DNA from: Ostrea edulis
Lineage: Eukaryota
DNA length: 64,000 nt
Direction of reading: 5' to 3'
NCBI RefSeq assembly: GCF_947568905.1
Contig: NC_079173.1
Span: forward strand, 20,584,001-20,648,000
Of the stretch, positions 2,244 through 53,474 are shown in pieces. How positions within the stretch are numbered: position 1 is the stretch's first letter; each line of letters starts with the position of its first letter. A model generated the notes under the pieces. That model saw only the letters and a list, made by a program, of their open reading frames with translations, had not been told where the DNA came from and ran no database searches. Position numbers and translations under genes: made by a program.

Positions 2244-3533
2244 TTAAAACCCACTGATTTCCCTATATTTTCTAATATACATGTATATAGTTTGCATTCA
2301 TCATCCAACGAATCATACTTACTCACAATTTTCTAATCAGAATATCGAAACAAAAGACATTCAATCAAATATAACAGTTTTACTTGTGCTGGTGTAAGGT
2401 TACCGACTGATCTGCAATTTGCTTTTTCTTCTTGTTCTAAACTTGTTCCAATACGACAAGCGTTCATTGTGGGATTAGATGCAGTTGCTAGTTTCTGTCC
2501 ATATATTGTCTATCCATCAGGAGTGACCTTCCCCCACGAATTGCAGACAGTAATTATTCTGTTATGCAGCCTCTGATGTTTAAATCACAATGTAAAGTTG
2601 ATGAATTAGTAATTTGCACGACGATTGTTCCATCTGATGCAGTAGATGCTTTGCAGCCCGCTGGACGCGGTCATCAAACTGCCTTCATAAAGCTATCAAA
2701 AGATTTCTATACACCCATCCAAAACGCTGCTGGTCATTTTTGAGGGCGATTTGGCGGCTCGTATCGTATTACCCCACAGATTGGGGGTGGGCGTGGTCGA
2801 CTATTGGTTGAATTGATTGCACTTTATTATGTAAACTTTTCATCATCGGTTGCCTAGGACATGAACACAAAACATTAATGTCATTTTAATGCTCTGCAGC
2901 TTCTTCCCAAGTCATATGCGAAATCTGGACAGACCCCATGTCGCTGTTGAATAGAGGATACTTTTTAGGTATACTGGTTTAGCAACTTAAGAAAAGGTTT
3001 GAGTCCAGTGTCACGTGTAGGTCACGGGGACGAACTCCCGTTACAAATCTCGCGGAGAATCATATCACCTGATATATGTTCTACGATGCTGAAATCGTTC
3101 TGGACACTGTGTGCTGCATGTTACTGAACGGCTGACCGGTGGCGGGATACAAAGAATCCCTGCATACCAGCAATTAAATCCTAAAGTCTGTCAGGGAACC
3201 GGAAAAACGATTCATTACAATGTCCAGCTTTATGAATCTTTCCTTTCTTGTTTAATGTTTGTTTAATTTCATGTTTTTAATAAAGTGAAATGGAATATCT
3301 ATCCATCAAAAAAATTAATTGTTGTGAATGAATACTATTTTCTTTTTTTAAGGAAAAAAAGATATGAATAATTGTTCTTAAGATATCAGTTTACAATTTA
3401 GAAAAAGAAAGATACAGTGGGTTAAATGCATCAATAATGATGTTCTTGTGCAGATATATACATGTAAATAAAAGAAAGATAAGATGAGGACGTATAATAG
3501 AGAAAATAGCCAGGTTCCTAAACGTGTTTTGAA

Positions 3534-3803: not shown

Positions 3804-5109
3804 AAGTGATATGTTGAAGTTACATGTTCTAGATACATCGGAAATTAGAATGTCAAAGTTAACATTCTCCTTTAGGAGCGAGATCAAAAGTTCAATGTCT
3901 GACAAAAATACTTAATTCACATAGCTTTCACCAAGACCCCCACCCCCCTTTAAAACTAAATATGATTAATGTTGAAACTAATCGATCAACAAGTAAAAAC
4001 ATATGATTATAAATAACACTCTGTATACCTATTATATATACTGTTTATCTACAAAAGAAAGTGTACATCAAAACTATTAAATGTAATATCATTATGTGGT
4101 TTTTTTTTTCTTTTTCCACTAAAGTGTAATCAATGTCGGATGACGGAAACTTACGGGAGATTTTATCCCTCCTCCCCCTAACTATTTGAATTTATATTTT
4201 TATCCGACATCGATCTTTTGATCTCGCCCCTATTATTTTATATAAGTATAGTGAAAACGGCACTATTTTTCTTCTGGACACCAATGGAAATTAAAAATTC
4301 TATATAATTTTTTTTTGGTTCAGAAAGAAAATATATTGTACACCAAACGAAAAGAAATAACAATCCCTATGGAATTATTTCGTTTGAAGATCAGAATCAA
4401 TAACATCCGACCATCGAGGGAGCAAATCTTGGCCTCAGTTTTCCACTCTTTTTGCAGAATGATGGACCATCATCCTACTCAGTGAGCTTAACATAAAGAG
4501 GCCCCACGTGCACCTTGTCCTTTTTGTCGACATTAAATATTTGTTTTCATCATGAACAAACAGGTCGCGCTAATCACCACGGTTTATCGTTGTTTACCTG
4601 GCGTTGTAATACGGGTATTCGAGGCGTTCGCGTTATACTTTATTGATGCCAGGTAAGCCGTTCAGAGGCTTGTCGGTAATCGCATCGGAAGGACCGTGTT
4701 AATGCAATTAACTTCACAATTTATACCCTTCTCCATTGAATTTGATGCAGTTTGGCGGATCATTGAAGTTGATGGATCGTCTTCACGAGTACGGAATCTT
4801 ATACCGTATTTTCATAGATTTTAGAGTCAGGTTGATCCTGTTCTAAAACACACAAGATGGAATAAAATATGAATAGTGTTAAGACACATCAAATAATCAC
4901 GTCGAGGTTTTTTACGTGATTTTCTTTTTGCTTTTTTTTTCTGTTTTTCCGGGGGGGGGGTTGACTTTTTGGGGTGTGGGGGTGGGTTTTTGTTTGTTCT
5001 TCATCTAGAATTATGACTCTGACAGTAATGTAGAAATAGAGTCATCATGTCCAACTCGTACATAAAATAAAAGTAGGGTCATCATTTAAACCTCCGGGTT
5101 AGAAGAGGT

Positions 5110-5720: not shown

Positions 5721-7364
5721 CCATCTTTCTTGGAACGGGAGATTCTTTATAGCAGGAAAAAAAAATTTAGACGATAATTCTACATTGAGGAAAAGTATAG
5801 TGTTGATCCCAACGCATTGCGTTGAATATTCGGTTATCGAAGTTTTGGATTTTTTTTTACAGCAACCGTCCATCTACACTAAATGAGTTCAAACTGATGT
5901 TTATTGTACATGTAAATTGGTTTTTCTTTAAATTAGTTCATTTTAGAAATGAATAGGGACGCTACGACCCTTGCTGTACTTTATTTTGATGTTGACAAAG
6001 AAAGTCAATAGTGCTTTAACATATGACCTTCGTTTGATTCATTACTCCCTATAGTTTACATTACAAGTACACGATTGTTTTGTTAAGCGGTACAAAAGTA
6101 TACGCTCATCGTGGTCACTACAGAAACACCAAAAACGTTAAAACCAATTCTTCACGGATAGTTTAAACTTTAGAAATAAAATAATAGCCGAATGACCGCA
6201 ATACCACTGAACCGGATTAAAACCACAATTAATCAATCAATCGTTTGTTAGAAGTTATTTGAGGTAAACTGACCACAGATGCAAGTCCTAATGGAAAATT
6301 TCTTAAAAACACTAATAATTATTCTCATCTTATCCGTTAAATTCAACATATATCTTGTGTATATACATTAACATTATTAATAAATATGTAAATTTTAAAA
6401 AAAAAATTGACGTTGTCAAAGAGATATATACCATATATACGTCTCAAACCTAACATTGTAGAAAATTAGAGAATACAATAAATGAAATAAATGCAAAGAA
6501 ATTAATACTGTATATCGATTTGTTCCGAATTCAATAAATAAATGAACCATATATGTCGGTTATGATGGGCTGTAATGTCAGTAGCTGCAGAAGTGTGACT
6601 CTCTGAGAAAATATAGGACTTCAGATCTGTTCCATTATTTTCCCAGAGAGGTACAGCTCTGCAGCTATAATATCATATGAATATCTTTTTTGTGCCGGAG
6701 CCAATATGTCTACAATATCTCAAAATGAAAGTAAACAACATGACGAATAATCAAAAATAGTTTTATTTTTTAAGGAATCAATATTAAACACAACTAACCA
6801 AACAAAATTTATCTCAATGAATTTCATCCCATGCCTATTAGTGAAAATCATGATAATTTAAACATCTAGAAAATTTGTTCGGCAATTGCAGTGACAGCCA
6901 ATACCACAGACTATCGCATCCCGGCAACCACACTGTATCCCAGAACACCACGGCGCCTCGGCAAGAGGACCTCACGAACTCTGTTATATTTTTACCCATT
7001 TAGATCTCACAGGAGACACCAGTCTTGTTAATTTTAACTATCAATTGTAACAGTTATTTTACAATAATATTCAGTAAACATAGATCATATACACATGTAC
7101 TACTCACTGCTTTTATTGTGTTTCAAAATTCAACAACTGTAGTCCATATTTAAATGGGTTTTAAAGATAACTTACGCTTATAAAATACCATAATTATTCG
7201 CTGAAAGGACTCAATGAAAAAACTAATAACTTCCAAAATTCGCAGAGATGACAAAACGGAACCATGAATATAAAACTGACATGGAGTTTTTGTATCAAGT
7301 AAAACACTCTATGTCTTCACCAATTCAGGAAAAAGTAAGTCTGCAATAATTTCTGTATTAATTA

Positions 7365-7567
7365 TCACAAGCTGATTGTGGAGTCTGCTTGCATCACGTC
7401 ATCACACGATTCCTGCTTAGCTTTATGTTTCGTGGGATCCTCTGGTATCCAGGTCTTGGCAAACATTGTCCGATTAGGCCCGAGGCTAGGATTTTTCTCG
7501 TCTCTCCATGACAACGAATGACCCGCCAAAGGGAGCCATCCACGTGCTATGTCGTCTGCTCGCATGC
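7365..7567 (-). CDS. ptf1a: Ptf1a exon 2 (C-terminus with RBPJ/Su(H)-binding tryptophan motifs)
   Basis: Acceptor ..cgtgtgacag|GC at 7568/7567, phase 1, matching exon 1. Encodes GHSLSW and AKTWIPEDP, equivalent to vertebrate PTF1A HSLSW and VWTPEDP. Spliced CDS is 657 nt (218 aa). Confidence 0.92.
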
Positions 7568-8712
7568 CTGTCACACGAACAGATTCGAAAAGAAAAGACA
7601 TTTGAATCGTCTGCTCAATAAAATAGAAAATCTGGTGATAGCTAAAATAAATAAAGAAAACGAATTTGTAATTTGTAATTCATTGGAAGTCAAAGAGAAT
7701 TGTTAATGTCTAATTATTCAAGTGTAATAGCTTCTTTGTGACATTTCAAACGATGATAAAGAAACGGATAATTTTTTCCTAAGGACGAGGTATTCTCTAC
7801 AAGTTTGCCATCTACGGAGCTTTTCGTCGACTGTAATCTAACGGATATTTCGAATTAAATCCAATGGTGTTTCTTCTATAATGAATACATGCATAGAGGT
7901 GAAACCTCGTTTTTCCGATCAGAAGCGCAAAGTAATATTTCTTACGTGTGAAAGGTATGGCGAATTAAAGGGATTATTCGTGACTCTCGAATTATTCAGA
8001 GTAATTCGAAGAAAAAAAAATCACGGGTTTCATTCTGTTCACATCAATGAAGTCATTATTATCATCATTAGGACTATCATTAGTATTTTCACTCACAATT
8101 ATCATGATTGAAAATTCGAGATCAAAATTATTAGTATTAAAAATATTGTCTCATTATGTTTGGGCATTTGAATTTAAAAAAAAAATGAACGAAAGTTCAA
8201 TATAATGAAATATTTCTTTTATGTTTAGAAATTTAGAATTTAGTGAGCAGTTAACATGCACGTGCTTTGGCACAGTTGCATCATTTGTCACTTGTATAAT
8301 TCGGATAGTCATCCTTTTCTGTGGACAATATTGAAAATAAACCCATTTATACATGGAGACGGTTGAGGAGAACGCACACAGGTGTAAGGCTACAGGTGTA
8401 ATAACACGAATGTTTTATCCGTCTTCTTTTATACTAGTAGCGAATTCGGAAATTAAAAGGATCGCAATTTATCGAAGCCAAGGTAGCGATGCTTTTAGTG
8501 GTAGGTATGAAACATTTGCATTTATAATCTGGATATACCAAACAGGGAAATATAAACAAATTAAAGGTTTGGATAAATTTCCGACTACCGTATTCGACAA
8601 AAAGAGATGAAAAAATGAAGATAACGAACACTGATAAATCCAATGAACCATATAAAATACAAAATAAAGAGCAGGGCAAACACGAACTTCTGGATACACC
8701 AGCGGTGGGATC

Positions 8713-8930
8713 AGGCCTGAAGGTTATAAAAACCTTTACCGTACTCATACTCAGCCATGTTTGTTATGAGTACAACTCTGAGTAAGCTCCCAGTTTACTC
8801 GAAAAATCTTGAGCATGAAATCCATTTGAGTATGAAAAGGATTTTATAAAAGTTTGAGTACGATTTAGAGCACGGAGATCGAGTTTGAGTATGAAAACGT
8901 GCTCAAAAAAGTTTTATAACCTCCAGACCT
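8713..8930. mobile_element. MITE in Ptf1a intron
   Basis: TIRs aggcctgaaggttataaaa / ttttataacctccagacct. It truncates a family B fragment (8615-8712). A related copy lies in opposite orientation at 15949-16194. Confidence 0.75.
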
Positions 8931-9595
8931 TATATCTAAGAGGAATAAGGGACCATGAGAAGTCTCTTAGTCGCCGAATTCCAGAAGCATATAATGCACA
9001 GTCTGATCCGTATGTAAGCTATCGTCTCGTCACGAGCCCTAGTTTATGTTCAGACTTTTAAGTCAATTCGAGTAAAAGCAGTTTTATTTTTATACATAGA
9101 ATCAAGGGGCAAATAGTTAAAAACTCTCACTAAGATGAAGAAAGCTACATGTAAAAAGACACTGCGTAAAAACAAGGGAAAGTGTTTTTGTATTAAAAAA
9201 AAACAACAACAAAAAAACAAACAAACAACTTGCACCACTTTTCGATTGAATTCTGCTCATCCAAACTCAAATTCTAACAGAATAGTAAATATACGAGTTA
9301 TTTGAGAAAATTATAAAGTAAAAAATCTGTTCACAAATAACAAATACTGTAGCTTTTTAAAACATTATCGTGGTTTTGTCCCCAAATGAAATGCCATTAA
9401 CATTCAAACCGTCCACAAAGGTGTGTAAATTCGCAGATAGCTACATTTTAGTGACATTCAAGTTTTCCTCTTCAATAACTTTAACACTGATCACTTGATT
9501 TTTTTTTAGTCATTCTCAACCACGAAAATTAGTATTCAACTAATAATAATGAAACCACAGAGAATGGCATTAAAGAAGGGTTAAGACATACGTAC

Positions 9596-10049
9596 TGTAG
9601 TGGTAATTGATAACAACTTTCCGGGGTTTCTCTTTGTACGCTGACTGTTGAGGATTCGCATTCCCAACGTTGGATTTCACCAGCTCGGACAGAAACCCTA
9701 TGTAACCTATAGCCAAGCGTAACGTATCTACTTTGGATAATCTTTTTTCGTATGGCAGTGTGGGGATGTGTGCGCGAAGTCCTTCAAAAGCGTCGTTTAT
9801 AGACTGCATTCGTTTCCTTTCTCGTAGATTCGCAGCCTCTCTCTGCTGGATTTGATGGAAGTGGTTGTCTTTTTTCTTTCTACTTTTCGGATTTGATTTC
9901 AGTATACCTTCCGCTGGAGAGTCTTGGCTTTCGTCAGATATTGCAGGAATATCGTCCACAAACGAAAAATCTGTTGAATCGGGTGAAGTAAGGATTTCAT
10001 CGAATTGTAAATAATCCATGACATATAGATTTTGAACGTTAAAATTCAT
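9596..10049 (-). CDS. ptf1a: Ptf1a exon 1 (bHLH domain)
   Basis: [53 protein letters not shown] is near-identical to the PTF1A bHLH. Donor TAC A|GTACGT at 9596/9595 follows KVVINYH, the same position as the vertebrate intron after KVIICH. Confidence 0.95.
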
Positions 10050-11574
10050 TTATGATGATAGAAATGTTTAAAAAAAAAAATTCACTTCTATCGCATATGA
10101 TCCAAACACAACATTACACAGAATTCCATCTGCAAATATTTCATTGCTTTGTAGATTTGTTGATAATTTGAAATTTTAATCGTGAAAACTTAAGCCTCCG
10201 TAGCCTATGTGATTACATTGCATAACCTCTCATTCATATCCTGATTTCCATTTCCATAAGCTTTTATCCTTTTGAATATTAATTACAGGACCCTTGATTT
10301 TTGTATTTTCTTTCATATCTAATGTAAATATAGAGACACGTGCTGTGATCGAAATTAGCCAATCAGATTATTTGTTCTATCTAGGTCGTGTGCTGTCGAA
10401 CTTTTGTTCGGGATTAATTACATGCTGTCTGTAGTCCCTCACATACAATAATGAACCGTAGACGTTGATTTACTTCCCTTTTTAATCTGATTTCTTCCTT
10501 TATTTGCAAACACTTGAAATGTCACTGTTGAGTTGCTACTCTTTTAATTTTCTTATTGAAATATAATTTATTTTATCGTTTCCAAAATGTTCAAAGACCT
10601 TAACAGGTAAAGCTGTGTATGCAGAAGCAGAACAGTTATGTGTACAGATGTAACGTGGCGGGATATTAGTTCATTCATCCAGATCAAAAATACGAAATGC
10701 TACTGTGTCTTTATATGGTAATGTAAATTAATGAATTGAGACATGTTGTTGAAGAAAATCTGAAACGTGTAAATATCTATTACGAATTTTGTAATTATCA
10801 TTTTGTCTGTTTGTTGAAAAGATAAAAAGTTAAAAATGCGACGTTTAGTTCAATTTCCAATATAACTCTTAAGTGAGACAAAATTCTGAATACACCCTAA
10901 AAGTGTAATAATTTTAACTGATGTAATTACGCTACAACCGGGGAATCCATATTTCATTTGTGTAAATCATAAGCGCAGTTTACTTTAGGCCAACCGGAAT
11001 TGTAAAAGTGGAATACTTACGTACAGAAAATCCGGTATGCAAACAAATGCCCTCGGAATTAATCAATACAGCATGAGAATTTCCGCATCTGATTTCAAAG
11101 ACGATCCTACTAATTAAAAGAAATCTTCAAATCGTTGATTGGCGTTGTGTGATTCGGTCTTTGGTTGCGTTGCAGAAAGAACAATGGTGAATGATTATCG
11201 ATATATTTATTAAACCTCTAACTTTTTTCTTCCTCTTCCACGGCATGTTATTGTTTGTCATATTTAACATGTTATTGGAGTCTGCATACCAGCATGTGCT
11301 CTTTTAAATGGAAATAGATCTGATATATATATTTATTTATGCATTTATTTATAATCTAGAAATAAGTACAGAAAAAGCACAAGTAGTAATACAATAAAAA
11401 TTATCACAAAGCCGATTGAGTATATATAGTCGACTAGTTTCTTCAAGGGTATATACTATATTTAGTTATACATGTACACAGTGGTTGTAAGGTGATATAA
11501 AATGCTTCAATACATTGCCACGCTTTAGTAGAGCTCTAAATGATGCATTGGTTATTCATTAGTTTTAGGCATTT

Positions 11575-12030
11575 CGAAATAACGAACAGTGATCTATCTC
11601 AAAATTCCTATAAAGAATGCAAAATTAAGATAAGGGCACACACGGACCCCCTGGACACAGCAGAGGTGTGGTCAGACAAACACGGACCCCTGGACACAGC
11701 AGAGGTGTGGTCAGACAAACACGGACCCCTGGACACAGCAGAGGTGTGGTCAGACAAACACGGACCCCTGGACACAGCAGAGGTGTGGTCAGACAAACAC
11801 GGACCCCTGGACACAGCAGAGGTGTGGTCAGACAAACACGGACCCCTGGACACAGCAGAGGTGGAATCTGGCTCGGATTTTCTCGAAAAAAAAATCTTTT
11901 ATTTGAGCAGTCAGAATTCGAGTAAAATCTCAGACTTATGTCCAAGTTTCGACTTATGATTTTCTTCGAGAATCCAGGCTAGGTGCCTAGGAGGAGTAAG
12001 TATCCCCTGTAGACCGGACACGCCCACCGT
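11575..12030 (-). mobile_element. Family B fragment with internal 39-bp tandem expansion
   Basis: B sequence on both sides; unit cacggacccctggacacagcagaggtgtggtcagacaaa x~5.7 at 11641-11863. Confidence 0.8.
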
Positions 12031-13064
12031 AAATATGTTGATCTAAAGACGGGCATTATCCGTTGCTTTATTTGCTATAGGGCATTTAACAGACTCTCCC
12101 AACACTACCCCTCTATTGTTTAGTATGCTCAATATTTTTCTTTTTTTCCACTCTGAAATGAATTAAATGTGCCATGTAAAAATCTCTGAATGTAATCACC
12201 TAGTCATTTCATGTGCTAAGAATATTCTAAGTGTTTCATAAAGAAATAAACGTACCCTTCCAATATATCAGAGCAGTACCTGCTACTCCCCCATTTCGAA
12301 GCTATTGGACATCTACTTAATTAGCTGCATTTAGTTGACTGTGAACTATTGTAACCTACCATTACTTAAATCTATATATACATGTAACGTACAATCAATT
12401 GTTAACAAATATGGACAATTTATTTCAAAAGGAAACTAATTCTTATTTTCATACCATTAGAAATGTAATCAAGAGAATGAAAAGATGAAACACTTCTTTT
12501 AAAGATAAAATCCAAATGAACTAATAGAAAAGTGATTCCTTAATTCTTTCGTGAGTCTCTAGACTGGCCAAGATGCCGCTACGCATGCATTTGAATTCGA
12601 CATAACGTTCACCTTTCGCCAGGTCACGTGCATCTTAACGTAGATACGACTCTAATTGTGATGGCAACCCACACAATGTCCTTAATCTGTTACCTGACAA
12701 ATTGACAACCAACTGCAGCATATTCGCTTTAGTGATTAAGGCATGTTTGAGCTTTGATTTCGATCAAATTTATTGCTAATGCAGATTAACAAACCAACGA
12801 AAAAGAACGTTCGAATGAATCGGGAAAGCTCGTATGGTTTCTTATATATTTCGTTATAACAAAGATCAAGTAATGCATGGGATTTATCGCGTCTCGTGAT
12901 TCGATGATAAAGATGGCGAAAGAAAGGACAAAGTACATTAGTTTTAACTGAACATATTCCAAATATTTCATGAAGCTGTTGTTTTAAAATAAAACACTGC
13001 AAGACTTAGTATTCAAAATACCGAGTGAAAAATAGACGATGTTTTTTTTGTTTGTTTTTTTTTA

Positions 13065-13300
13065 AAAATTCCCATTTGAGATATTTATGACTTTATGAAG
13101 AAACAATTTCCATTTTGGGATATTTATGAAATTTAGAAGAAAAAAGAACTTCCATTTTGAGATATTTGTGGAATTAAGAAAAAATTATTCCCATATTGAG
13201 ATATTTATGAAATCAAGAAAAAATGAATCCCATATTGAGATATTCATGAAATCAAGAAAGAAAATGATTCCCATAGTGAGATATTCATGACCTTAAGAAA
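13065..13300. repeat. Diverged ~40-bp minisatellite
   Basis: About 6 units of ttccca(t/a)tttgagatatttatgaa..aagaaaaaa. Confidence 0.7.
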
Positions 13301-15099
13301 AGAGAATTACATGTATCAATCATCATTTTCGTCCCTATATGTATAATGCCTCCCCATTCTGTTCACGACCTGAATCTCCGTTGTTTGCCTTCTCTTTCCA
13401 CAGCTCTTCTCTGTGTTTCCTTTGGTCTTCCTTCCTTCACCTTTCGGGTGTCCAATCTAGGGCTGTTCCGGCATGACTATCACTTCTCATTCTTAGTTCA
13501 CATCAACCTTCATGCTTTTATGTTGTTCCTATCGTTTCCAGGTTGATCAATGTGTTTCACATCGATATAATTTTGTGGTATCATGAAAATCATAATTATT
13601 AGAAATATGTTCAACTAAAAGCTGGAGAAATCTGTTCAATTAAAGCTGGATATAACAAGTGAATAAGGAATACAAGTAGTTATATATTGAAGTTCGTTAT
13701 ATCAATATCATAATATAGAATGTACAATAGATCTGAGAAAAATTAACTCATGAAATGAGCGTGTCATGCCTGTTAGTTTAAACACCGATTACATAACAAG
13801 TACCCGTATGATAATTTTAATCAGCACAGTCCTTCGATATGTTTAAGAAAACGCTAGTTTATCCACAGTTTAAGTATTGATATAAAGGATAACGTCAATT
13901 GTTCTGGGAGCTTCTGTAAACAATTTTGCCGGGTGGACACAGCAATCAAAAATATCCCCTTCACCTGCCGCGAAGAAGCAAATATGGACGATAGAGCCTT
14001 TCAATGGTCTCGGATATTTGAATCCGTTTAATGGCCCTATCTCTATCACCCATGCATTGTCCAGCGTATTGACAAAGTTCTTCATAACTCTCCTAAGTCA
14101 AAGGCCAGGTGATCGTACTTGAACCCCCGTGACCTCGCGTGCGCTTCGAAGAACACCGAGCCCGACCCCTTTGACCCGTCTTTAAGAAACAGGGTTGCTA
14201 ATTGATAAAATACCCGAGTAGCGATGGTCTGTTTGGGGTTGATTATTTGTAACGTCTGTTTTCTGACTGACCACAGTATGTCTTTATACTGTGAAATGCT
14301 TGTAATTTTCAATCAAACGTGTCTAACACCCCAAAGGAATTTTACTTGACACGCCCCCAACCGAGTGAATATTCTCAGAAATAAATGTAGCTTAATAGCA
14401 CAGCCTACCAAATCTGTTCTTTAATGAAACGAAAAATATTTCAGTCTCTTTGATATCTTAATTGTAAAAATTTGAATTAAATCATGTGGCATTCAATATT
14501 TGCGAAATTAAGGTGAAGACAGGTAACGATTAAATGATAAATAATTTCGAATAACCGCTATTCTCTTCCTGTACTACTGTATATAGAAACCGCACATCAA
14601 CGCGACTAACGTTGAGATCAGTTGAATAAAATTGACCCCACACTTGTAACATTGGGTACATTGAGGTAAACAAGGAGAATAGTGTATCAAGTTTTAAGCC
14701 CAGACATTTTATGCAAGTATTATCAATTCGAGCCCGGTATATTATTTGTACATGTATATGTATAGGTACAGTATTTGTATATATTTTCATGCTGCCCCTT
14801 GAGGGCCCTTGATTAGAAAATAAAAATATATTCAATGTTCTATTTGCGAACTCGCTTTCTTCTTCTCAAATACAAACCTTTGATTTTCTTACTTTGATAA
14901 TACAGAAAACATTTTCTTTTTTGAAAATTTTGTATCAAAACTGGGTAAAGCTCTAAGTTTTCAACATGACCTACTCCTATTATATCTTGGATCCAACTCT
15001 GTTGTTTAAAAAGTGGGGAAATCTGGTATTGCATTGCGTATATGAATATTTTTCTGCACTTTCCTATATACCAATAAACGCCCATACCTGTACCCTTTA

Positions 15100-15101
<2 letters not shown>

Positions 15102-15144
<43 letters not shown>
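15102..15144. repeat. (CT)n microsatellite
   Basis: About 21 CT units. Confidence 0.95.
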
Positions 15145-15148
<4 letters not shown>

Positions 15149-15948
15149 TGTGCCCCTATGAATTAAAGACCGTTCGGGTACATACTTATCCCTCAATTAA
15201 ACAGCATACAATACATAATGAAGGAAAAAAGAATATTGCCAAGAAAATGTTATGATATACTGCTAATGACCAAACATCGCAACATGATATACAATATATG
15301 TGCTTTGCAGTTTCAGGGGATTGCTAGCACCAAAACTCAGTCTCCCAAGTCCTTACTGTAAAATAAGCATGTGAAAAGAATATCGAAAACTCGAGAATAA
15401 GACGAAGAAAAACCTTTGCGAAACAAACTTGATTATATAACAGTGTACAAAATACGCGATAGATTTATACAGTAACAAGCCCTCTATATTATATCTCCTG
15501 CGACACTGGGAGAACCTTTGAAGTATAACATTTATTATCATGTTCGGATAATCCATGTGTAAACCATTGCCATAATTTGTGGAATCGCCATTACTAGGAG
15601 ATTGGAAATCACAAGACGTTTTGATTTCCATTCAATTGAAGATTTTTATTATATTTGATTGCTTTCCTTAAGTCAACAATAGTCAATTGTTTCCCCAGAG
15701 TCATACGATATACTGTGTAAATGTTATGATACACGATTTGTCTTATCAGCATTTACAGAATTAGAATGGACAAGCATATTTAGTCTGTAATGGAAAAGAG
15801 GCATAGCTCTCATTCTATCAACAAAACGAACTATGAGTTTGAGTAAGGATGAAGATATGTTAAGTGATTTTTGATACTTTATTTAAAAAATATTTCGTTA
15901 TTTTCAATATCGGTCTGGTCAGTCATCATGAACTTGAATGACCAAGAG

Positions 15949-16194
15949 CGGTCTGGGGGTTATAAACTTTTTTTTAGCACGTTAACATACTCAAACTCGA
16001 ACTCCATGCTCTAGATCGTATTCATACTCAAAAGTGAAGGTTATAAAACTTTTATAGAATCATTCTGGTACTCAAATGGAGTACATGCTCAAGATTTTTT
16101 GAGTATGCTTCAGAGCTTGCTCAGAGTTGTAATCACAGCAAACATGGCTGAGTTTGAGTATGAGTACGGGAAAAGTTTTATAACTTCCAGGTCT
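15949..16194. mobile_element. MITE, inverted relative of 8713-8930
   Basis: TIRs ggtctgggggttataaa / ttttataacttccaggtct. The internal sequence is a diverged reverse complement of the 8713 copy. Confidence 0.75.
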
Positions 16195-19100
16195 GGTGAT
16201 GTCTTTATATGAGTGAGAAATTCTCAAATGGCCGGACTTCAAGCAACAAAAAATTCTGCATCTTGGTTATGTTTTCAACTTTCAGCCAGATTCATAGTAG
16301 CTCTACTTCTATCACGTGGTCCAGTTCGCATCCCTTTGGTACACGATCAAACTGGTTCTATTCCCTAGAAGAAAGGATTTTAAAAAATGATAACAATGAT
16401 TAAAGAATTTCAACCCCCCTAAAAAATCTGCACTTTAATTATTCAAAACAAGAAAAGATATCCCTGGCATAACCTCATTTCATGTTTAAAGAAATTATTC
16501 CTAGAATTACATGTATTTGGGTCATCTAGAATAATTGTGTTATAAGATGTATTCTCGAAATCTTTACATTAAAAAAAAGAAAATTAATTAATTAGAAACT
16601 ATAGCTTTAAAATCAAGCCTAATGGCAATTTTTTTTTCATTCTGTTTATGTGAAAAAGGACAATTTTATGTTCAATAATACATGTATATTATGATCATTA
16701 CCATGCATAACATTCCACGTAGATATGACCAAGAAACTGGGCTAGAGGTTCGTGTAGGAGAAACGAAGGCAGTTTGATTTTTTTTTTACTTTGCGGACTA
16801 TCTACATTGGGAAGTGAAACACGTGGTCATTTTAGTAAGTAATTGAAATGCTCTTGGTGAAGCAAATATTGCTTGCAGAAACTATTACCAAGATGTGTCA
16901 TCAAGATTATGTGAACCTGGGACAATCAACATGTCTCCTGCATGTTAAACGATAGTTAACCATTAAAAAACTCTCTCTTCTGCTGAGAAATGGTGTACCA
17001 TAAGCGGCCCTGTTATCTCATTTTGTGTACACAACGCCCGACTTAGTTGACGTTTGAAATTTACAAGTAAATAAATAGTCCTCAACCCGCGCGTGATAAT
17101 GGAGAGAGGCAACGAGCGGCGCGCGTGACAGCTCGTCTACTCAATATTAAGTTGCTACATTGTAAATGTTCAAATTTAAATCGAAGTGGCATGTAGAAAT
17201 TCTCAACTTAAGAGGGTATTTACAGATTTTTGAGAACCTTAGACGTTACTTTAGTCCATAGTGATGTGCTAAAAATAGATGATGAATTATTATACATGCA
17301 CTGTAACTGGAACAGAGGAAGTTTTTTTTAAACACAATATTATTATGTTGTTTCTGTTGAATAGAACCGAATTTTACAAAATTATAGTAAGGTACATTTG
17401 TTTATTTTGTAAAGATATTTCTATCAATGCAAGATCAATGTAGGTGAACATATGTAGAAATGTTAGAAGAGACTTTATATATTGCTGCAGGTAATAAATA
17501 AAACAATTTTGCTATTGATTAATTTAATTAACATTTTCACACAATTTTGTAAATAGATAAATTTCAAAGTATTTCTAGCTATATATATGTCGATAATATT
17601 GATACCTGCAGTAAAGCGTATAAGGGCAGAAAGGTCATTACAAATACCTGACCTAAGTCATCGCTGTTTCTTTTAATTTCTATTTTCATACAGAAATGGA
17701 AGCGTTACCATGCAGACAAAAGCAACTATTATTCGCCTGGCAACTAAGAAAATTTTTCTTTTCTTTTCCGTTTTCATATTCAATTAAAGCGTTATAATAG
17801 AATTCGTTCGGCTTGTTTTAAATTTACAAAACCGTTTTTAACAAATTCAAACAAGGACTTCACAATGCCTTGACAAAGTTAGTAGGGTGCTTTTTAGTAG
17901 ACAACTTTTCCCCCCTTGTTTATTCTGACAAAATTTAATATTGGAAATGGAGAGAACAATTAAATCATTCAAATCGACACTAGAGAGTTTTAATAATCGT
18001 TTTTGTATGCTAATCAAATAGTACACCGCGTATTGTTGACTTAAGAAAATAATGGAGAATATTGGCTTATTATACCTGAACAAGGATATGTAACACCATG
18101 TGACGATAATGTCCCTTGTCTGCGAGAAATACAAAGAGCCGACCGGATATTCACAGGATACCGAAGCCAAATAGCGCACACTCACAATACAATATGGCCG
18201 CAATGGTCAAAGATATGCATTTGAAGAAAGTTTTAAGTATCTTCGTTTGGCGGTAATAATTTGTGTTCTACTGTCGCATTCTCGCTTGAAATTCCTTTTC
18301 GAATTAGAAGTTTACATATGATTCAATTTCCGCGCTCTGTAAATGATCATTTGTAGATGTAATGGGGTACAAAGCGGAAACGTTAGTAACTAATTTCCGC
18401 GGGTAAACTCTCGCCGTTTTTTCCAAAATGTAATTTGCTTGGTTCACTAGCAATTCCGTGGTCTTTGAGACATATCAAAACATATTCAAATTCTGTCCAT
18501 TTAGTTTCACTTAGGAATGATAGTGAAATGCACTGTAGTCTGTTTGACAGCCTTCTTTTAAAAGACAACGAGAGCTAAACGATCATACATACATGCATGC
18601 ACGGAATATAATTAGTTCTGTCTAATGATTTATATATATGCAAAGAAGCAACTTGACAAAATGCTGAAATTTTGTATGAAATGAAAAATCCCCAAATCCC
18701 AAAATCGAAAGATTATTACGTTATCAGTTTAACAGGTTAGGCTCGTCATGTCAGGGAGAATTATAGGCGATAAGCTGAGAACGGCGTGAACTCCTGGTAT
18801 TCATGTACTGACACTAAGAATATAAGTGTGATGTTTATCAGAGAAATGTATCAGCAAAATCAAAATCGAATGTCCACAAAGTTAGGTAAATACAATTACA
18901 CATGGTACCCTGTTATCCTTCTACCTCTCTCGTTGATCTTGACGGAGCAGGACAAGTGTTAAATTTCAAAACTAGGCCTAAAGCAGGAGTTTTAAGGATG
19001 CTTGATTCCTCCCCAGCGTTTGGTCAAAGCCACATTCAATGTATCAGAATTCTTTATTCACTTTAATAACTCTATGATGATTCATAGAATAAAGTTTCAT

Positions 19101-19308
19101 CTTCATATGGTGTCATATTGACACGCCTTTGTAAATTGTTGTCATAAATCACATAAATTATGTTTCGAGAAAAAAAAACTTTTCTTGAATGTTTCGTAGT
19201 CTGAGAAATATAGTAACAAAATTACAACAAATCCTACTATGGTGGATAAACAAAAAATACAGCGTCCTATATATGCATTGCATAGGAAAGAAAAGTCTTA
19301 AACCTATA

Positions 19309-19347
<39 letters not shown>

Positions 19348-19356
19348 TACATACAT
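19309..19356. repeat. (AC)n/(ATAC)n microsatellite
   Basis: Direct reading. Confidence 0.95.
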
Positions 19357-19477
19357 ATAAAAATCTACATGCACAAGAAGTAGTATGATAAAAATATCAC
19401 AAAGCCGATTGAGTACGAATATACTTGATTTTTAACCTTTATGATTTAGAATACAGTGATGGTTTAGACAGCCACGC

Positions 19478-19625
19478 NNNNNNNNNNNNNNNNNNNNNNN
19501 NNNNNNNNNNNNNNNNNNNNNNNNNNNNNNNNNNNNNNNNNNNNNNNNNNNNNNNNNNNNNNNNNNNNNNNNNNNNNNNNNNNNNNNNNNNNNNNNNNNN
19601 NNNNNNNNNNNNNNNNNNNNNNNNN
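19478..19625. other. Assembly gap
   Basis: 148 N. Confidence 1.
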
Positions 19626-20150
19626 TTAGAGAGAGAAAGTTAATTAAGACTATCCTCACTACTTCGCGCATTGGGATTAGCATATCGTTTGTCCTGGGGA
19701 AGGGACCTGTCGTCCTCAAAAATTGACAATCTAATTGTTCGTGTCGCTGGTCATTTTAGTGCTTATATTTATATGATAATCCTGTTTGTATTGGAGAATG
19801 CTAATGGATAAAAAGATGTATATTGAAAATGGACGGCTAAGTTAATGAATGGACAATGAATTAATGTGTAAGTCTTTCAATCACTAAACGTGTGCATAGT
19901 TTTCCCCTTAGTTGTTAACACTCTGCATTTGAACATAGAGAAACCCGGCGATGAATACGTTTTCAGTGTGCATGGCCACCCGATCCCATCTTCTCGCATT
20001 GCATGGTGAATTTAAATTTTCGCCGAAATCCTACGCTATGAGAGGGAGCACCAGTGTTTATCTGTTTTAAATATCTTATTGCCAAAATAATTATTTATTT
20101 ACCGTCGTGTTAAGTCGAACCCCGTGTCTCTGTCGCACGCGAGCGATCTG

Positions 20151-20204
20151 ATTGGTCGATAGCGGACGAGTTCGGGGTGTTACACGGGCCATGTCCTATA
20201 TAAA
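20151..20204 (+). promoter_or_regulatory. Candidate core promoter of the Ptf1a-like paralogue
   Basis: Inverted CCAAT (ATTGG 20151-20155) and TATATAAA (20197-20204) in a CpG-rich patch about 250 bp before the ATG. Confidence 0.5.
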
Positions 20205-20457
20205 CCAGAGAGTGTCGCGTGCTCTGTGGTATATGAAATATCTGTCGTCCAACCAAACTTGTTTAACCCAAACTTTCCTTAAGGCCTTATCAGCACTGAT
20301 AATATCTACCATCTATTAATCATTGATCATTTACGTTTATGAGATGGAAATGTTCAATGAAAAATCTCCCTAATTATTATTCACGAGAGTCGATTCTAAG
20401 ACATTGTTATATATTTTTTCATCTGATCGGAATAATAATCGTTTTCCAGTTCGAACC

Positions 20458-20881
20458 ATGAATGCAATGGATAATTTTCTGCTGGACGAAGACTTTCTTG
20501 ATTTTTACGAACCTTTAGAATACAGTGATGGTTTAGACAGCCAAGCCTCAAACGAATCCGACGAAGAGAACATCTTCTTTTTCACGGACAAGCACTCGGG
20601 CAAACCAGTGAAAAAACAACAGCAGCGGAAGGCCGCCAACATGCGCGAGCGACGGAGGATGAAGTCCATCAACGACGCGTTTGACAATCTCCGAAACTCC
20701 ATCCCGTCCACCATCAACGCCGACAGAAGACTATCGAAGGTTGACACTCTCAGACTAGCCATTCGGTATATTGGACATTTGTCGGAGTTGGTTCAGACTT
20801 CTGCTGAGTTCCAAACGGAAGTATCTATGAAGAAAAATAGCAGAACCCACGATAAAGTCATTGTCCGGTGTCACTTTTCTG
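20458..20881 (+). CDS. Ptf1a-like paralogue exon 1 (bHLH)
   Basis: accATG at 20458; [54 protein letters not shown]; donor TCT G|GTAAGT at 20881/20882, phase 1, after KVIVRCH. Confidence 0.92.
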
Positions 20882-21588
20882 GTAAGTCGGTTAAAGTTGC
20901 GTGAAACATTTTCTTGTGGTGTCCTGAAGACATTGAACACCCCTCTTACTATTAGATTTGTGTAAAACTTGTAGAATGAACCTTTAAAACTACAACTAAA
21001 AGTTTTATTGGTTATCTTATATCGATGATCAATCGAAATATTTAAAAAAAAAAAAAAAAAAATTCAAAATCTTTATAATCTACAAACAATCGAGCTCATA
21101 AAATGAAAACGGTTGATGCAAAGCAAGAGATTCGTGTAACGATGCATATTTTGTTTTTAAAAAGAAGATACTTGTATTCAAATTGATGCAGTTATTTCAC
21201 ATTTCTTTTTATCATTTTAAAAAAATCCATTTACAACTTTTCGTGTCATCCTTCCTAAATGTATATGTTCAGCTTTCGGATATTGAAACAGAAACTGATG
21301 TTTATGCTACTGCTCTCTCGCTACATTTCCTTTAAACAACTTCGACTATGACTGAACGTTTTCTTTTTTATGGAAATATTGTAATATCTAATTTTAGATT
21401 AAAAATCAATAATGGCTACCCTTTGATGAGAAGTTAGAGCAACACATGACACCTTCAGTGATATTTCTATTGCAATAGATATAAATCGTCATCATTAATA
21501 AATTTTCAAATAAAAAACGAAATCTAAACGAACTAAAAAAAAAATAAAAAATAATATTTAATGTTTGATGTTTATGATTCTTTTTTAG

Positions 21589-21779
21589 ATATCACGGAGG
21601 AGATTTTAGACAACCATGAGCCCCTTATGGGCCACTCGCTCTCTTGGGATATCAGCAAACCCCCAAACCAAACCGGGGAAAACCGATTCACCGCCAAAGT
21701 CTGGGTTCCGGAAATACCTACCGAGTCCGATTTAATTAATATCAACTCGTATTCTAATGACTTCCACCAATACCTGTGA
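21589..21779 (+). CDS. Ptf1a-like paralogue exon 2
   Basis: Acceptor ttttttag|AT at 21588/21589, phase-compatible. Encodes GHSLSW and AKVWVPEIP. Spliced CDS is 615 nt (204 aa). Confidence 0.9.
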
Positions 21780-24700
21780 TTGACTTTTCCTTCGTGTCTC
21801 ACAAGGACTCACGAAAGTTTGTTCCGAAGAGCAAGCAAAAGGATTTCTATGCATAACAAGTCACTGCCAAAATACCCGGATGGAACTGCTTCATTTGAGC
21901 CGAAAAAGGCAGTGAGGTGTCGAATAGGCAACGAAAGCGCAAGAATGTGCGATATATATACCAGAATACTTCACTAGTGTTCTTTGTTATTTGTTTATTT
22001 GTTAGACTTCATACAAACAATTATTTATTTTATGATGTATTTACACAATGTTGAATATTTTATATCTTTATACGAAATAGCCAGAGATTGATTTTTGCTA
22101 CCATGGTGAAATTGATGAATATAAAAATGAGAAAAACAAGGCGTTGTGCTTTTCTTTTTCCAAAGTGTGTGGAATGATGATTATAAATATAAAAATCAAT
22201 AAAATAAAAAAGAAAGCTCGATTTTAGGGAAAACACAACTTTCCCTGGTTTGGTAATATTACATTGCATGATTAGACTGAGTTCGGACCCTAGGATCATA
22301 TTAAATATTATATTCACATTTACAATTTTTCGCCCTAGGTATCTTTACAGAATGCAATAATAGTCACTTCTTCCTGAAAGCGATACAGTAGTAAACAATG
22401 CTCGTATGAATCTTGATAAACATAGTGCCTCTATTCTAATGACTGGGAATTCCTACGAAAATGAAAGTAGAATATGTAAATATTTTAAATAAATAAATAA
22501 ATAAATAAATTTCGTTTTTGAAATTACATGGGAGTATGAACTGGAACTCTTGACACCGCCACATTAATGCGCTTCATGATGCTAGCGTGAAGCGTCACAA
22601 TTCATTCCGTCATGTATTTTCAGAAATGAAAATTTATTTCTTAAATAAAAAAGAAAATATATGTAATTTTCCCTTTATATTTCATATGAACCTATATTTT
22701 TTCCCCAAACCTATTTCCTGCATGAATTTCTCGTTCAAATCTCACAAAACTTGTACTAACAAATTGATAATTTGATGTTGCTTTGGACAATTGTCAGTAT
22801 GTGTAGTAAAATTTAGATAATGTCGCAATAAAACAGGAAAATATCACGGCACAAAATTTATAAATCGTGACGAAAATTGTACATCACATTTTAAATCAGA
22901 ATATTTTTAAACTTCAAAATTAAACAAATAAGTTGCAGTGAATCAACGTACCAAATTTGAAGTTTGAATCAGACTAGAATTATAGACATTAGAATTTTTT
23001 TTCTTCAATATTTGATTTCCTACAAAGCATGCAGGCAAAAAGAAAATTCCATTTGTTTATATCATTATTATTCACCACTGAAAAATATTCCGCTGTTATA
23101 TATTGCACGTTTGCGAACGGGTACCTTTTCACAAAATCCAAATTCAGCAACAAGCATTTGTCTTAAATCCTATTTTTTGTCAATTTATTGTTTTATGATA
23201 TCAAAGTCTGTGATGTGTCAGATGTTAGTGATATTCAAAAGGAAAAAAAAGAATGGCAGGATATAAAGAGTTAAAACAAAAAGTTTACATCACACGTATT
23301 AGCTCATTTAAGTTTCTGAGATTTTTCAATAAAAAATATCGCTAACGTCTCAAACATAAGATATCATTATAGAATACATTTACCTTCTTTCTACAGTAGA
23401 TCAATAAATGCATAAACAAATTTATCCGTAGATAAAATGAATAAATAACACATAAAGAAAATGTGTTCAATTTCTCTGATCGTGCTTAAGTAGATGCAAT
23501 ATGTAAAAAATCAAATTCTTTGACAAATGTTCATAAAAAGATGAAATTAAACAGAAACATGCAAAATCATGTGATCTCATTTCATATATTTTGAAAACAA
23601 TTTTCATTCATATTTTTCAGTGTGGTTTCTTCCATGATATTGTTCTAGCTATAAACAATGCCTTTTAAAGAGGCACTAGCTGTCCACTAGGGCGTAAAAA
23701 ACTTTTAAAATTTTGAACATTGATTTTTTAAAAATGCTGGAATGCATTAAAAATGAAGAAAAATAAATCTGAGAGTGCAAAAATCGACCTCCAATCGAAT
23801 TTTATGAATTTTTTTTTTTAAATCTTGCTAATTTCAATGAATTTATTTCCATACAATATCGTTTCGCACAATGTTTCTATATAAACAAGAGCAATTCTTA
23901 AGTCGAAGTCACAACAAAAAATTGCGAGATATATGGAATTTAATATGTCAGTGGGGATTGTAATGTACTGTAAAGCTTTTTCAGTCATTTCGGTAACAAT
24001 CGGGAAATATGACGTTGGACCTAATGCCCCTTGCAGAACGCCAAATTGTTCTACAGATTATCAGCATAAATTCTGACCATGACAAAATAATCAGCTGTCA
24101 TTTTAGAAATAGGAAATGCTTTAGCTTTTAAGTGGCGTGACATAATCCGAATTTCAAACGATTTTTCTAAAATTTATATTATGTAAAACTGAGGAATTGC
24201 AAAAATCTTCAATCAACTCAAGAGATGAAAAGGGCACCTGCAACCAAGTCTACAAGAGGGTTGACTAATTACTCATTACGAACCCTTATCAGATGCCAGC
24301 AATCAATACATTTGTTCTATAAATGTTGAAAAGACTTCTTCTCAACCCGGATCATTACTAAAGGATAGAGAGCACTTCATAGCCACGCGACGTAAGTAAA
24401 CACAGCGGTACACGTGTATAGGGGGCGTGGTCGGGACATATTGACACTGGAACGGCTAGCATCAGTCTATTGTGAATCAAGATAGGCTACTACATAATTT
24501 TGAAATTTGATAAAATATATAACAAAATAACTTTTTAAAAAAATGAATCTAGAATATAGGAGACATCCGAACTTAAAAGATATAATATTATGCAAGTTTA
24601 TTATGAACTCCCATTATACAATGTACTTTATTTGGAAATGTGGTTTTAAATAAACACCGACGATATTTATGCAAAAACAATGACAACAATATTGACTTTC

Positions 24701-25524
24701 AATAAAAAGCATTTATTAGGGTATTTTTGAATTGGTAGTTCAGTATTAAGCATTTGGAACTGTCCTTTTGTGTCATAAACCAAACCAGGGCTACTGTACG
24801 TATCTCACATTTAGATGTCGCATGACACTGTTACTACAAGCAAAAGTAAAAAATTTCACGAAGGTGTAAATAAGATTTTCGTCAAAGGAGGACTACCGTT
24901 AATGATTTACAAAGGACTTACAAATGTAATTCTACCGATGTTTAAAGCAACAACTGGTTTGAAACCGATCAATCCATTTAATTTGTTTAAACAGTTCGAT
25001 TTTGACCATAAAATTACAGAGTAACGGTATTTTTGTCTTTGGTTAACGAAGACAGTGGTACTGGGAACTCGTCAGGTGGCGCACTCTGCGAGACTTTGCC
25101 GAAACGAGATTTAGTATAGCGGCTGTTAGTTCTCCCATGAATCGAGACCAGTGTATCTGGCCATTAGATATACACAACAAGAAATTTAAATCGATTTGAA
25201 GTTGTAGGCTTTTTGTTTCTTTTAACGTTAGTATTTTCTTCCGCCTGATTATTTACCTTATTTCAAAAATACACAATATCAATACCCTAAAAAAAAAATA
25301 ACACAAACAATAAACCTAATAAGTAAATAAATAATATTAATTCTAAAAAAAAAAAAGAACGCCAAAATCTATATTTACTAATGGCAAACATAGTTGATAC
25401 GCGGAAATTCTCGAAAAGATGGTTTTTCAAACATACTAATTAAACATTACTCACTAATTAAACATTACTCATCAACTAACTCTATTCCATATCTGTCGGG
25501 AGAGCTTTTCTCCTTGCAACATAA

Positions 25525-53276: not shown

Positions 53277-53474
53277 NNNNNNNNNNNNNNNNNNNNNNNN
53301 NNNNNNNNNNNNNNNNNNNNNNNNNNNNNNNNNNNNNNNNNNNNNNNNNNNNNNNNNNNNNNNNNNNNNNNNNNNNNNNNNNNNNNNNNNNNNNNNNNNN
53401 NNNNNNNNNNNNNNNNNNNNNNNNNNNNNNNNNNNNNNNNNNNNNNNNNNNNNNNNNNNNNNNNNNNNNNNNNN
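53277..53474. other. Assembly gap
   Basis: 198 N. Confidence 1.

What the first reader, a model, noticed from the sequence alone, without database searches (positions are those of the whole stretch)
7365..21779. Head-to-head pair of Ptf1a paralogues sharing a ~10.4-kb intergenic region
Seen: two complete two-exon bHLH genes point away from each other. They share the phase-1 intron position (after KVxxxxH) and both C-terminal motifs (GHSLSW; W-x-P-E). Known: PTF1A is usually single-copy, and these tryptophan motifs let it form the Notch-independent PTF1 trimer with RBPJ/Su(H). Inference: this is an old inverted tandem duplication whose copies may share a bidirectional regulatory region and could have split functions, for example digestive gland exocrine versus neuronal.
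Basis: partly seen in the sequence, partly recalled or inferred. Interest (0 to 1): 0.75.

Follow-up and report, generated by a model that had tools for sequence, protein, structure and literature searches.

The report
Ancient head-to-head Ptf1a gene pair
The flat oyster carries two diverged copies of the cell-fate gene Ptf1a pointing away from each other; the pair is real and over half a billion years old, but linked Ptf1a duplicates in molluscs were already published in 2017 and both genes are already annotated.

Summary
The window is Ostrea edulis. It carries two intact two-exon bHLH genes, head to head, with start codons 10.4 kb apart. Both are RefSeq models named "pancreas transcription factor 1 subunit alpha-like": gene A is XP_048755471.1 and gene B is XP_048755468.1. 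They are about 43% identical. Both keep a phase-1 intron and both C-terminal tryptophan motifs (GHSLSW and a W-x-P core).

Gene A is the canonical Ptf1a. Gene B belongs to a strongly supported second clade that holds bivalve and gastropod copies and also second copies from nemerteans and annelids. AU tests reject a mollusc-only or a nemertean-only duplication.

The head-to-head layout recurs in Saccostrea, a scallop and the nemertean Lineus. Patella has both genes on one strand, and in Mactra they lie 12 Mb apart.

The assembly gap is intergenic, 833 nt upstream of gene B's start codon, so no reading frame crosses it. Conserved noncoding blocks on both sides of it are collinear with gap-free Saccostrea sequence.

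The core claim is not new. Bao, Xu and Shimeld (2017) reported two linked Ptfb(Fer1) (= Ptf1a family) paralogues in five molluscs, with divergent embryonic expression in C. gigas.

Additions here are the wider clade, the conserved orientation, B-specific signatures and the conserved noncoding blocks.

The parts
9596..10049 (-). Gene A (canonical Ptf1a, RefSeq XP_048755471.1) exon 1. The ATG is at 10049, and the conserved orthologue start MDYLQ is at 10019. The exon ends in phase 1, with a GT donor at 9595-9594.
   Evidence: The RefSeq protein P0220 equals the model.
9690..9845 (-). bHLH domain of gene A.
   Evidence: Pfam PF00010, E 9.3e-22, residues 69-120 of the exon 1 translation.
7365..7567 (-). 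Gene A exon 2 with stop codon. It holds motif C1 GHSLSW (7523-7506) and motif C2 AKTWIPEDP (7460-7434).
20458..20881 (+). Gene B (second Ptf1a paralogue, RefSeq XP_048755468.1) exon 1. It ends in phase 1, with a GTAAGT donor at 20882.
20623..20781 (+). bHLH domain of gene B. Its loop is one residue longer than in the A type.
   Evidence: Pfam PF00010, E 1.9e-20. Loop insertion seen in the alignment.
21589..21779 (+). Gene B exon 2 with stop codon. It holds C1 GHSLSW (21630-21647), C2 AKVWVPE (21693-21713) and the B-specific tail PTESDLINI (21717-21743).
21780..22139 (+). Gene B 3' UTR, ending at a poly(A) addition site.
   Evidence: RNA-library contigs of three runs lie at 21824-22139. One carries 20 non-genomic A after 22139.
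20011..20345 (+). Gene B proximal promoter block, about 78-80% identical to Saccostrea. It has a conserved CCAAT box (ATTGG, 20151-20155) and a TATA box (20197-20204).
13873..14428 (.). Largest conserved noncoding block between the two genes, 84% identical to Saccostrea echinata. It holds two conserved CACCTG/CAGGTG E-boxes (13962, 14106).
   Evidence: It is noncoding by 1-nt indels, mismatches spread evenly over the three codon positions and stops in all six frames. Motifs. No Rfam family.
10050..11213 (.). Gene A upstream region, with two blocks conserved with Saccostrea (10050-10527 and 10897-11213).
15566..18181 (.). Three further collinear conserved noncoding blocks (15566-15749, 16971-17280, 17632-18181), all left of the gap.
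19478..19625 (.). Assembly gap (148 N) in the intergenic region.
   Evidence: The flanks are collinear with gap-free Saccostrea sequence.
19424..19477 (+). Short copy of part of gene B exon 1 at the left edge of the gap. Positions 19445-19474 equal 20514-20543 (30 of 30). Positions 19424-19434 equal 20497-20507.
   Evidence: No such copy in Saccostrea. Unexplained.

Best explanation
This is an ancient pair of Ptf1a-family bHLH genes in Ostrea edulis.

Gene A is the canonical Ptf1a orthologue. Gene B belongs to a second, faster-evolving paralogue lineage. That lineage arose by a local duplication before molluscs, annelids and nemerteans diverged. In several lineages it has stayed next to gene A, mostly head to head.

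Inferred mechanism: each protein dimerises with an E-protein through its bHLH domain. Each also recruits Su(H)/RBPJ through the two retained C-terminal tryptophan motifs, forming a Notch-independent PTF1-type trimer.

The basic regions are nearly the same, so the two copies most likely differ mainly in where and when they are expressed. That expression would be directed by conserved noncoding elements in and around the shared intergenic region.
For: Shown:
- Both exon models equal RefSeq proteins, and both have HLH domains.
- Gene A's best hits are Ptf1a of all phyla. Gene B's best hits are a mollusc set also named Ptf1a-like.
- The trees place gene B in a clade with 99/100 support. With nemertean and annelid second copies added, support is 100/99.
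- AU tests reject a nemertean-only clade (p 1e-5) and a mollusc-only clade (p 2e-5).
- All ten orthologue loci are two-exon and phase 1. A one-codon offset is specific to the B type, including Lineus B.
- G-H-S-L and the W-x-P core of C2 are invariant across 23 A and B sequences.
- Head-to-head layouts: Saccostrea 22.7 kb, Mizuhopecten 36.8 kb, Lineus 45.6 kb.
- Collinear conserved noncoding blocks are shared with Saccostrea.
- A polyadenylated gene B 3' end is present in RNA libraries.

Literature:
- Linked Ptfb(Fer1) paralogues with divergent embryonic expression in C. gigas (PMC5381572).
- The W298A substitution in the mouse Ptf1a C-terminus abolishes RBPJ binding (PMC6054649).
Against: - Binding of Su(H) and an E-protein by either oyster protein is inferred from motif conservation only.
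- The first tryptophan is replaced by Cys in some B orthologues (Elysia, Plakobranchus, Dreissena).
- No conserved E-box plus TC-box pair, the PTF1 site type, was found in the conserved blocks, so vertebrate-style autoregulation has no support.
- Conserved noncoding blocks also lie outside the pair, so 'shared bidirectional' control is not shown.
- Orientation and linkage are not universal. Patella has the genes on the same strand, and Mactra has them 12 Mb apart.
- In this assembly the two genes sit on different contigs joined across the gap.
- The AU-test groups were named after the tree had been seen.
- The B clade has a long stem and some long branches (Owenia, Dimorphilus).
Confidence: 0.85

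Rival explanations
1. The pair is an assembly artefact: a collapsed or duplicated haplotype, or a false scaffold join across the gap at 19478-19625.
For: Gene A and gene B lie on opposite sides of an assembly gap. The left edge of the gap carries a 30-nt perfect copy of gene B exon 1, which shows that the assembly is troubled there.
Against: The proteins are only 43% identical, so they are not haplotypes. Each has its own orthologues in many species. Saccostrea echinata has the same head-to-head order in sequence without N, and conserved blocks on both sides of the Ostrea gap are collinear with it at similar spacing: 1830 bp in Ostrea against 1576 bp in Saccostrea. The scallop and Lineus show the same layout.
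Confidence: 0.03
2. Gene B is not a Ptf1a paralogue. It is a member of another group A bHLH family (Fer3/Nato3, Fer2 or Mist) that converged on similar C-terminal motifs.
For: The B clade has a long stem (0.5-1.1 changes per column). No sequences of other bHLH families were available as outgroups.
Against: All named hits of gene B are Ptf1a. It shares the two-exon, phase-1 structure. It shares both C-terminal motifs, which are the hallmark of Ptf1a. It sits next to gene A in four species. The tree places the B clade inside bilaterian Ptf1a when rooted on cnidarian Ptf1a.
Confidence: 0.04
3. The duplicates arose independently in molluscs, nemerteans and annelids. The B-like features are convergent or come from long-branch attraction.
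For: Bao et al. found only one gene in Capitella, Helobdella and Lingula and noted poor resolution. Owenia2 and Dimorphilus have long branches that meet in the tree. The one-residue loop insertion is found only in mollusc B and Dimorphilus.
Against: The joint B clade has 100/99 support. AU tests reject phylum-specific clades. The B-specific one-codon intron offset is shared by Lineus B and mollusc B. Mollusc, nemertean and annelid B-clade sequences share K (R in one Dimorphilus copy) in place of the A-type Q in the R-M-Q-S-I-N motif. The same A(-)/B(+) head-to-head layout occurs in Lineus and in bivalves.
Confidence: 0.08

Closest known systems
Mollusc Ptfb(Fer1) paralogue pair of Bao, Xu and Shimeld 2017 (Genome Biol Evol 9:869, PMC5381572)
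   Same: The paper reports two genes of the Ptf1a/Fer1 family per mollusc genome (Patella, Lottia, Biomphalaria, C. gigas, Pinctada). They are linked on one scaffold, were judged ancient, and have divergent embryonic and similar adult expression in C. gigas. The C. gigas orthologue of gene B is XP_011423241.1.
   Different: [quoted passage not shown] Orientation and intergenic distances are only in a supplementary figure that I could not read. It found a single gene in two annelids and in Lingula. Here second copies from Owenia, Paralvinella, Dimorphilus, Lineus and Tubulanus join the B clade.
[quoted passage not shown]
   Same: Shared features are the bHLH domain, the two-exon gene, the K-V-I-I-x-C-H stretch before the intron, the C-terminal GHSLSW motif and the W-x-P-E motif. 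The tryptophan equivalent to mouse W298 is present in both oyster genes.
   Different: In vertebrates PTF1A is single copy and it is RBPJ that is duplicated (RBPJL). In the oyster the bHLH subunit is duplicated. The vertebrate 5' autoregulatory enhancer has PTF1 bipartite sites (PMC9545688), and none was found conserved here.
Drosophila Fer1 (48-related 1)
   Same: It is the single insect orthologue of the same family (family naming as in PMC5381572).
   Different: It is single copy. No B-type paralogue was found in any arthropod. The arthropod duplicates (Homarus, Allacma, Strigamia, Tachypleus) are lineage-specific and fall within arthropod or own-species clades in the trees.

Membership tests
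Ptf1a / Fer1 bHLH family (PTFa of Simionato 2007; 'Ptfb(Fer1)' of Bao 2017) | Group A bHLH domain with Ptf1a-type sequence; best matches are Ptf1a. | tested here: met
   Pfam HLH for both genes. All named best hits of both genes are Ptf1a. RefSeq names both as pancreas transcription factor 1 subunit alpha-like.
Ptf1a / Fer1 bHLH family (PTFa of Simionato 2007; 'Ptfb(Fer1)' of Bao 2017) | C-terminal motif C1 (G-H-S-L-S-W). | tested here: met
   Gene A 7523-7506 and gene B 21630-21647. G-H-S-L and W are invariant across 23 A and B sequences. Three B orthologues carry W to C.
Ptf1a / Fer1 bHLH family (PTFa of Simionato 2007; 'Ptfb(Fer1)' of Bao 2017) | C-terminal motif C2 (A-K-x-W-x-P-E), with the tryptophan needed for RBPJ binding (mouse W298). 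| tested here: met
   Gene A has AKTWIPEDP and gene B has AKVWVPEIP. W and P are invariant in the alignment. The role of the tryptophan comes from PMC6054649. That W298 is the C2 tryptophan rests on my own knowledge of Beres et al. 2006.
Ptf1a / Fer1 bHLH family (PTFa of Simionato 2007; 'Ptfb(Fer1)' of Bao 2017) | Placement inside the Ptf1a clade in a tree that includes other group A families as outgroups. | tested here: inconclusive
   With cnidarian Ptf1a as root, both genes fall inside bilaterian Ptf1a. No Fer2, Fer3 or Mist sequences were available to me as outgroups.
Ptf1a / Fer1 bHLH family (PTFa of Simionato 2007; 'Ptfb(Fer1)' of Bao 2017) | Physical formation of a trimer with an E-protein and Su(H)/RBPJ on a bipartite E-box/TC-box site. 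| not testable with these tools
   Needs biochemistry. Only the motifs are present.
Spiralian Ptf1a-B clade (defined here) | Membership of the 100/99 clade, K in place of Q in R-M-Q-S-I-N, and an intron one codon further from C-H. | tested here: met
   Gene B is in the clade. It has RMKSIN. Its intron follows C-H-F-S in the split codon D, as in all five B loci tested.

The most novel reading that the evidence does not exclude
Ptf1a-A and Ptf1a-B form a two-gene cluster that predates the mollusc-annelid-nemertean split. Its head-to-head orientation was ancestral and has been held for over 500 million years in oysters, scallops and a nemertean by enhancers interleaved between the two promoters. 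Ptf1a-B would then be an unnamed spiralian-wide second RBPJ-recruiting bHLH with its own C-terminal tail (P-T-E-S-D-L-I-N in molluscs). It would give these animals two PTF1-type complexes where vertebrates achieved the same by duplicating RBPJ.
Probability: 0.45. Interest if true: 0.45.

Novelty: already known. Interest (0 to 1): 0.27.

Why it matters
Ptf1a specifies exocrine digestive cells and inhibitory neurons across animals. A second, anciently retained paralogue that keeps the Su(H)-binding motifs bears on how these two roles were divided in spiralians. Long-conserved head-to-head gene pairs are also good material for studying shared enhancers.

The existence, linkage and expression divergence of the mollusc pair are already published, and both oyster genes are annotated. 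This window therefore adds an orthologous instance plus some refinements, namely the clade's reach, its orientation and its conserved noncoding blocks. It does not add a new kind of thing.

Tried and rejected
1. PTF1-type autoregulation. I looked for an E-box (CANNTG) within 6-35 nt of a TC-box (TTCCCA/TGGGAA) in 10050-20457. There was only one pair (16808/16820), outside any conserved block. The four TC-boxes found are about what base composition predicts. A relaxed 5-mer TC-box conserved with Saccostrea was found in no block.

2. Rfam scan of 6000-23500: no family.

3. Coding potential of the 556-bp conserved block: rejected.

4. Noncoding conservation with scallop, Patella, Mactra or Lineus loci: only the bHLH exons align.

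5. Nucella synteny: neither protein is on record in the contig index. Adjacency rests only on the consecutive locus tags ACOMHN_054513 and ACOMHN_054514.

6. RNA evidence. Only tiny 3'-tag libraries held gene B, so splicing and tissue pattern could not be shown from reads.

7. Oppiella nova P0230 scored high with the B profile. It is an A-type sequence with an internally repeated bHLH, and I left it out of the tree.

8. Solved structures give only generic bHLH domains such as Myf5, MyoD, Twist1 and NeuroD1.

9. Joined sequences. No self-joined exon model was sent to any search tool. Exons were searched separately by reference, and the full-length proteins used are database records (P0220, P0122). 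Inside one script I joined annotated exons of orthologue loci, only to check them against their own database proteins.

10. The gap was neither filled nor looked up.
Full report
**What is there.** The window is from the flat oyster Ostrea edulis: gene B's exon 1 is 100% identical to an O. edulis RefSeq protein on a 49-Mb record. ORF listing and direct reading show two bHLH genes.

- Gene A is on the minus strand. Exon 1 is 10049-9596, with a GT donor at 9595-9594. Exon 2 is 7567-7365.
- Gene B is on the plus strand. Exon 1 is 20458-20881, with a GTAAGT donor. Exon 2 is 21589-21779.

Both exon 1 products carry a Pfam HLH domain (E 9e-22 and 2e-20). The two proteins are 43% identical over exon 1. 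They are 41% identical over the conserved part of exon 2, which holds G-H-S-L-S-W and A-K-x-W-x-P-E in both. My models are identical to RefSeq XP_048755471.1 (P0220, 218 aa) and XP_048755468.1 (P0122, 204 aa), both named "pancreas transcription factor 1 subunit alpha-like". RefSeq starts gene A at the first ATG (10049). All orthologues start at the equivalent of the second ATG (10019, MDYLQ).

**The gap.** The N run at 19478-19625 lies in the intergenic region. It is 833 nt upstream of gene B's ATG and about 570 nt upstream of its conserved CCAAT and TATA boxes, so no reading frame crosses it. It does mean that the two genes sit on different contigs of this scaffold.

I tested the join without touching the gap letters. 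Against the orthologous Saccostrea echinata loci, which contain no N, conserved noncoding blocks on both sides of the gap are collinear and similarly spaced. Block 17632-18181 lies to the left and block 20011-20345 to the right. They are 1830 bp apart in Ostrea and 1576 bp apart in Saccostrea. The join is therefore supported.

One oddity remains. The last 54 nt before the gap contain a perfect 30-nt copy of gene B exon 1 (19445-19474 = 20514-20543) and an 11-nt copy just before it. Saccostrea has no such copy. This is either a small real partial duplicate that broke the assembly or a contig-end artefact. I could not tell which.

**What the genes are.** Gene A's closest relatives are the Ptf1a proteins of Saccostrea and Crassostrea virginica (76-78%), followed by Ptf1a of every phylum down to cnidarians. 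Gene B's relatives are first Saccostrea (91%) and Crassostrea gigas (XP_011423241.1). They are followed by a set of bivalve and gastropod proteins at 45-62%, also named Ptf1a-like.

- A 66-sequence maximum-likelihood tree rooted on cnidarian Ptf1a places gene A with canonical Ptf1a. It places gene B in a clade with 99/100 support.
- A profile search with the B clade then turned up second Ptf1a-like genes in nemerteans (Lineus, Tubulanus) and annelids (Owenia, Paralvinella), in addition to two Dimorphilus genes.
- In a second tree these join the mollusc B genes in a clade with 100/99 support, while the first copies of the same species stay with canonical Ptf1a.
- AU tests reject trees in which all nemertean sequences (p 1e-5) or all mollusc sequences (p 2e-5) are held together.

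Two caveats apply. The groups were named after seeing the tree, and some B branches are long.

Independent characters agree with the tree. All ten orthologue loci examined are two-exon with a phase-1 intron. A-type genes split the second codon after the C-H dipeptide and B-type genes the third, including Lineus B. B-type proteins have K where A-type proteins have Q in R-M-Q-S-I-N. Mollusc B proteins share a tail, P-T-E-S-D-L-I-N. The duplication therefore predates the split of molluscs, annelids and nemerteans.

**Arrangement in other genomes.**

| Species | Layout | Distance |
|---|---|---|
| Ostrea edulis | head to head | 10.4 kb |
| Saccostrea echinata | head to head, B(-) then A(+) | 22.7 kb |
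| Mizuhopecten yessoensis | head to head, A(-) then B(+) | 36.8 kb |
| Lineus longissimus (nemertean) | head to head, A(-) then B(+) | 45.6 kb |
| Patella caerulea | same strand, B then A | 43.6 kb |
| Mactra antiquata | same chromosome | 12.4 Mb |

Head to head is thus widespread and possibly ancestral, but it is not fixed.

**Regulatory landscape.** Between Ostrea and Saccostrea most intergenic DNA no longer aligns, yet eight collinear blocks do. These include a 556-bp block at 13873-14428 with 84% identity, as high as the coding exons. That block is not coding: it has 1-nt indels, mismatches spread evenly over the three codon positions and stops in all six frames. It matches no Rfam family. 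It contains two conserved CACCTG/CAGGTG E-boxes.

Gene B's promoter block keeps a CCAAT box and a TATA box. Further conserved blocks lie outside the pair on both sides, so the landscape is not confined to the shared spacer. No conserved E-box plus TC-box pair of the PTF1 type was found. I have no support for vertebrate-style autoregulation (PMC9545688).

**Expression.** Contigs from three small RNA libraries lie at 21824-22139, just downstream of gene B's stop. One of them continues into 20 A that are not in the genome. This marks a polyadenylated 3' end of gene B at about 22139. Splicing and tissue pattern could not be read from these data, and gene A was not tested.

**How it most likely works.**

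Shown:
- There are two intact, conserved, transcribed (B) and annotated (A and B) Ptf1a-family genes.
- Their DNA-contacting basic regions are nearly identical.
- Both C-terminal tryptophan motifs are retained.

Inferred:
- Each protein pairs with an E-protein and recruits Su(H)/RBPJ independently of Notch, as mouse Ptf1a does. A W298A change in the mouse C-terminus abolishes RBPJ binding (PMC6054649).
- The copies differ mainly in expression.

Published C. gigas data support the last point, showing divergent embryonic and similar adult expression of the two Ptfb(Fer1) genes (PMC5381572).

**Novelty.** Bao, Xu and Shimeld (2017) already counted two genes of this family in five molluscs. They reported their linkage, proposed that the cluster is older than the mollusc-annelid split, and speculated that co-regulation maintains the linkage. 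Both oyster genes are in RefSeq, so the core finding is already known.

- strong support for a single B clade that reaches nemerteans and annelids;
- the recurrence of the head-to-head layout in a nemertean;
- B-specific sequence and intron signatures;
- retention of both RBPJ-type motifs in B;
- a map of oyster-conserved noncoding blocks.

Earlier notes of this scan did not cover this locus.

Noticed in passing
window 19424-19477: A short copy of gene B exon 1 coding sequence (30 of 30 nt plus 11 of 11 nt) sits directly at the left edge of the assembly gap. It is absent from Saccostrea. It may be a real partial duplicate or a contig-end artefact.
   Followed up: partly
window 11640-11863: A 39-bp minisatellite with 5.7 copies at 99% identity lies in the intergenic region. 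It gives open reading frames in several frames that are not genes.
   Followed up: no
window 13068-13301: A 39/81-bp tandem repeat holds three of the four TC-box-like TTCCCA words of the intergenic region. It is not conserved with Saccostrea.
   Followed up: no
window 10019-10049: RefSeq starts gene A at the upstream ATG (10049, 218 aa). Saccostrea, Crassostrea and a 92%-identical relative all start at the equivalent of the second ATG (10019, MDYLQ), so the extra 10 residues may not be translated.
   Followed up: partly
window 9600-9620 (gene A, K-V-V-I-N-Y-H-Y): The nearly invariant Cys of the K-V-I-I-x-C-H stretch is Tyr in O. edulis gene A, and also in scallop gene A.
   Followed up: no
window 2489-3399, 4473-4618, 24089-24411, 25014-25137: Further blocks at 74-83% identity to Saccostrea flank the pair on both sides, collinear and outside any gene called in the Saccostrea record. 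They are probably more conserved noncoding elements.
   Followed up: partly
window 53277-53474: A second assembly gap (198 N) lies in the window, far from this finding.
   Followed up: no
P0230 (Oppiella nova, partial protein): This mite protein contains the same A-type bHLH segment twice in a row. It looks like an assembly or annotation artefact, and it scored misleadingly high with the B-clade profile.
   Followed up: partly
L002 1-2847 (Saccostrea echinata, upstream of gene B): Two transposon-like genes (Mutator transposase; an Exu/RNase H-like domain) sit inside the Saccostrea intergenic region. This explains part of its larger size (22.7 kb against 10.4 kb).
   Followed up: no
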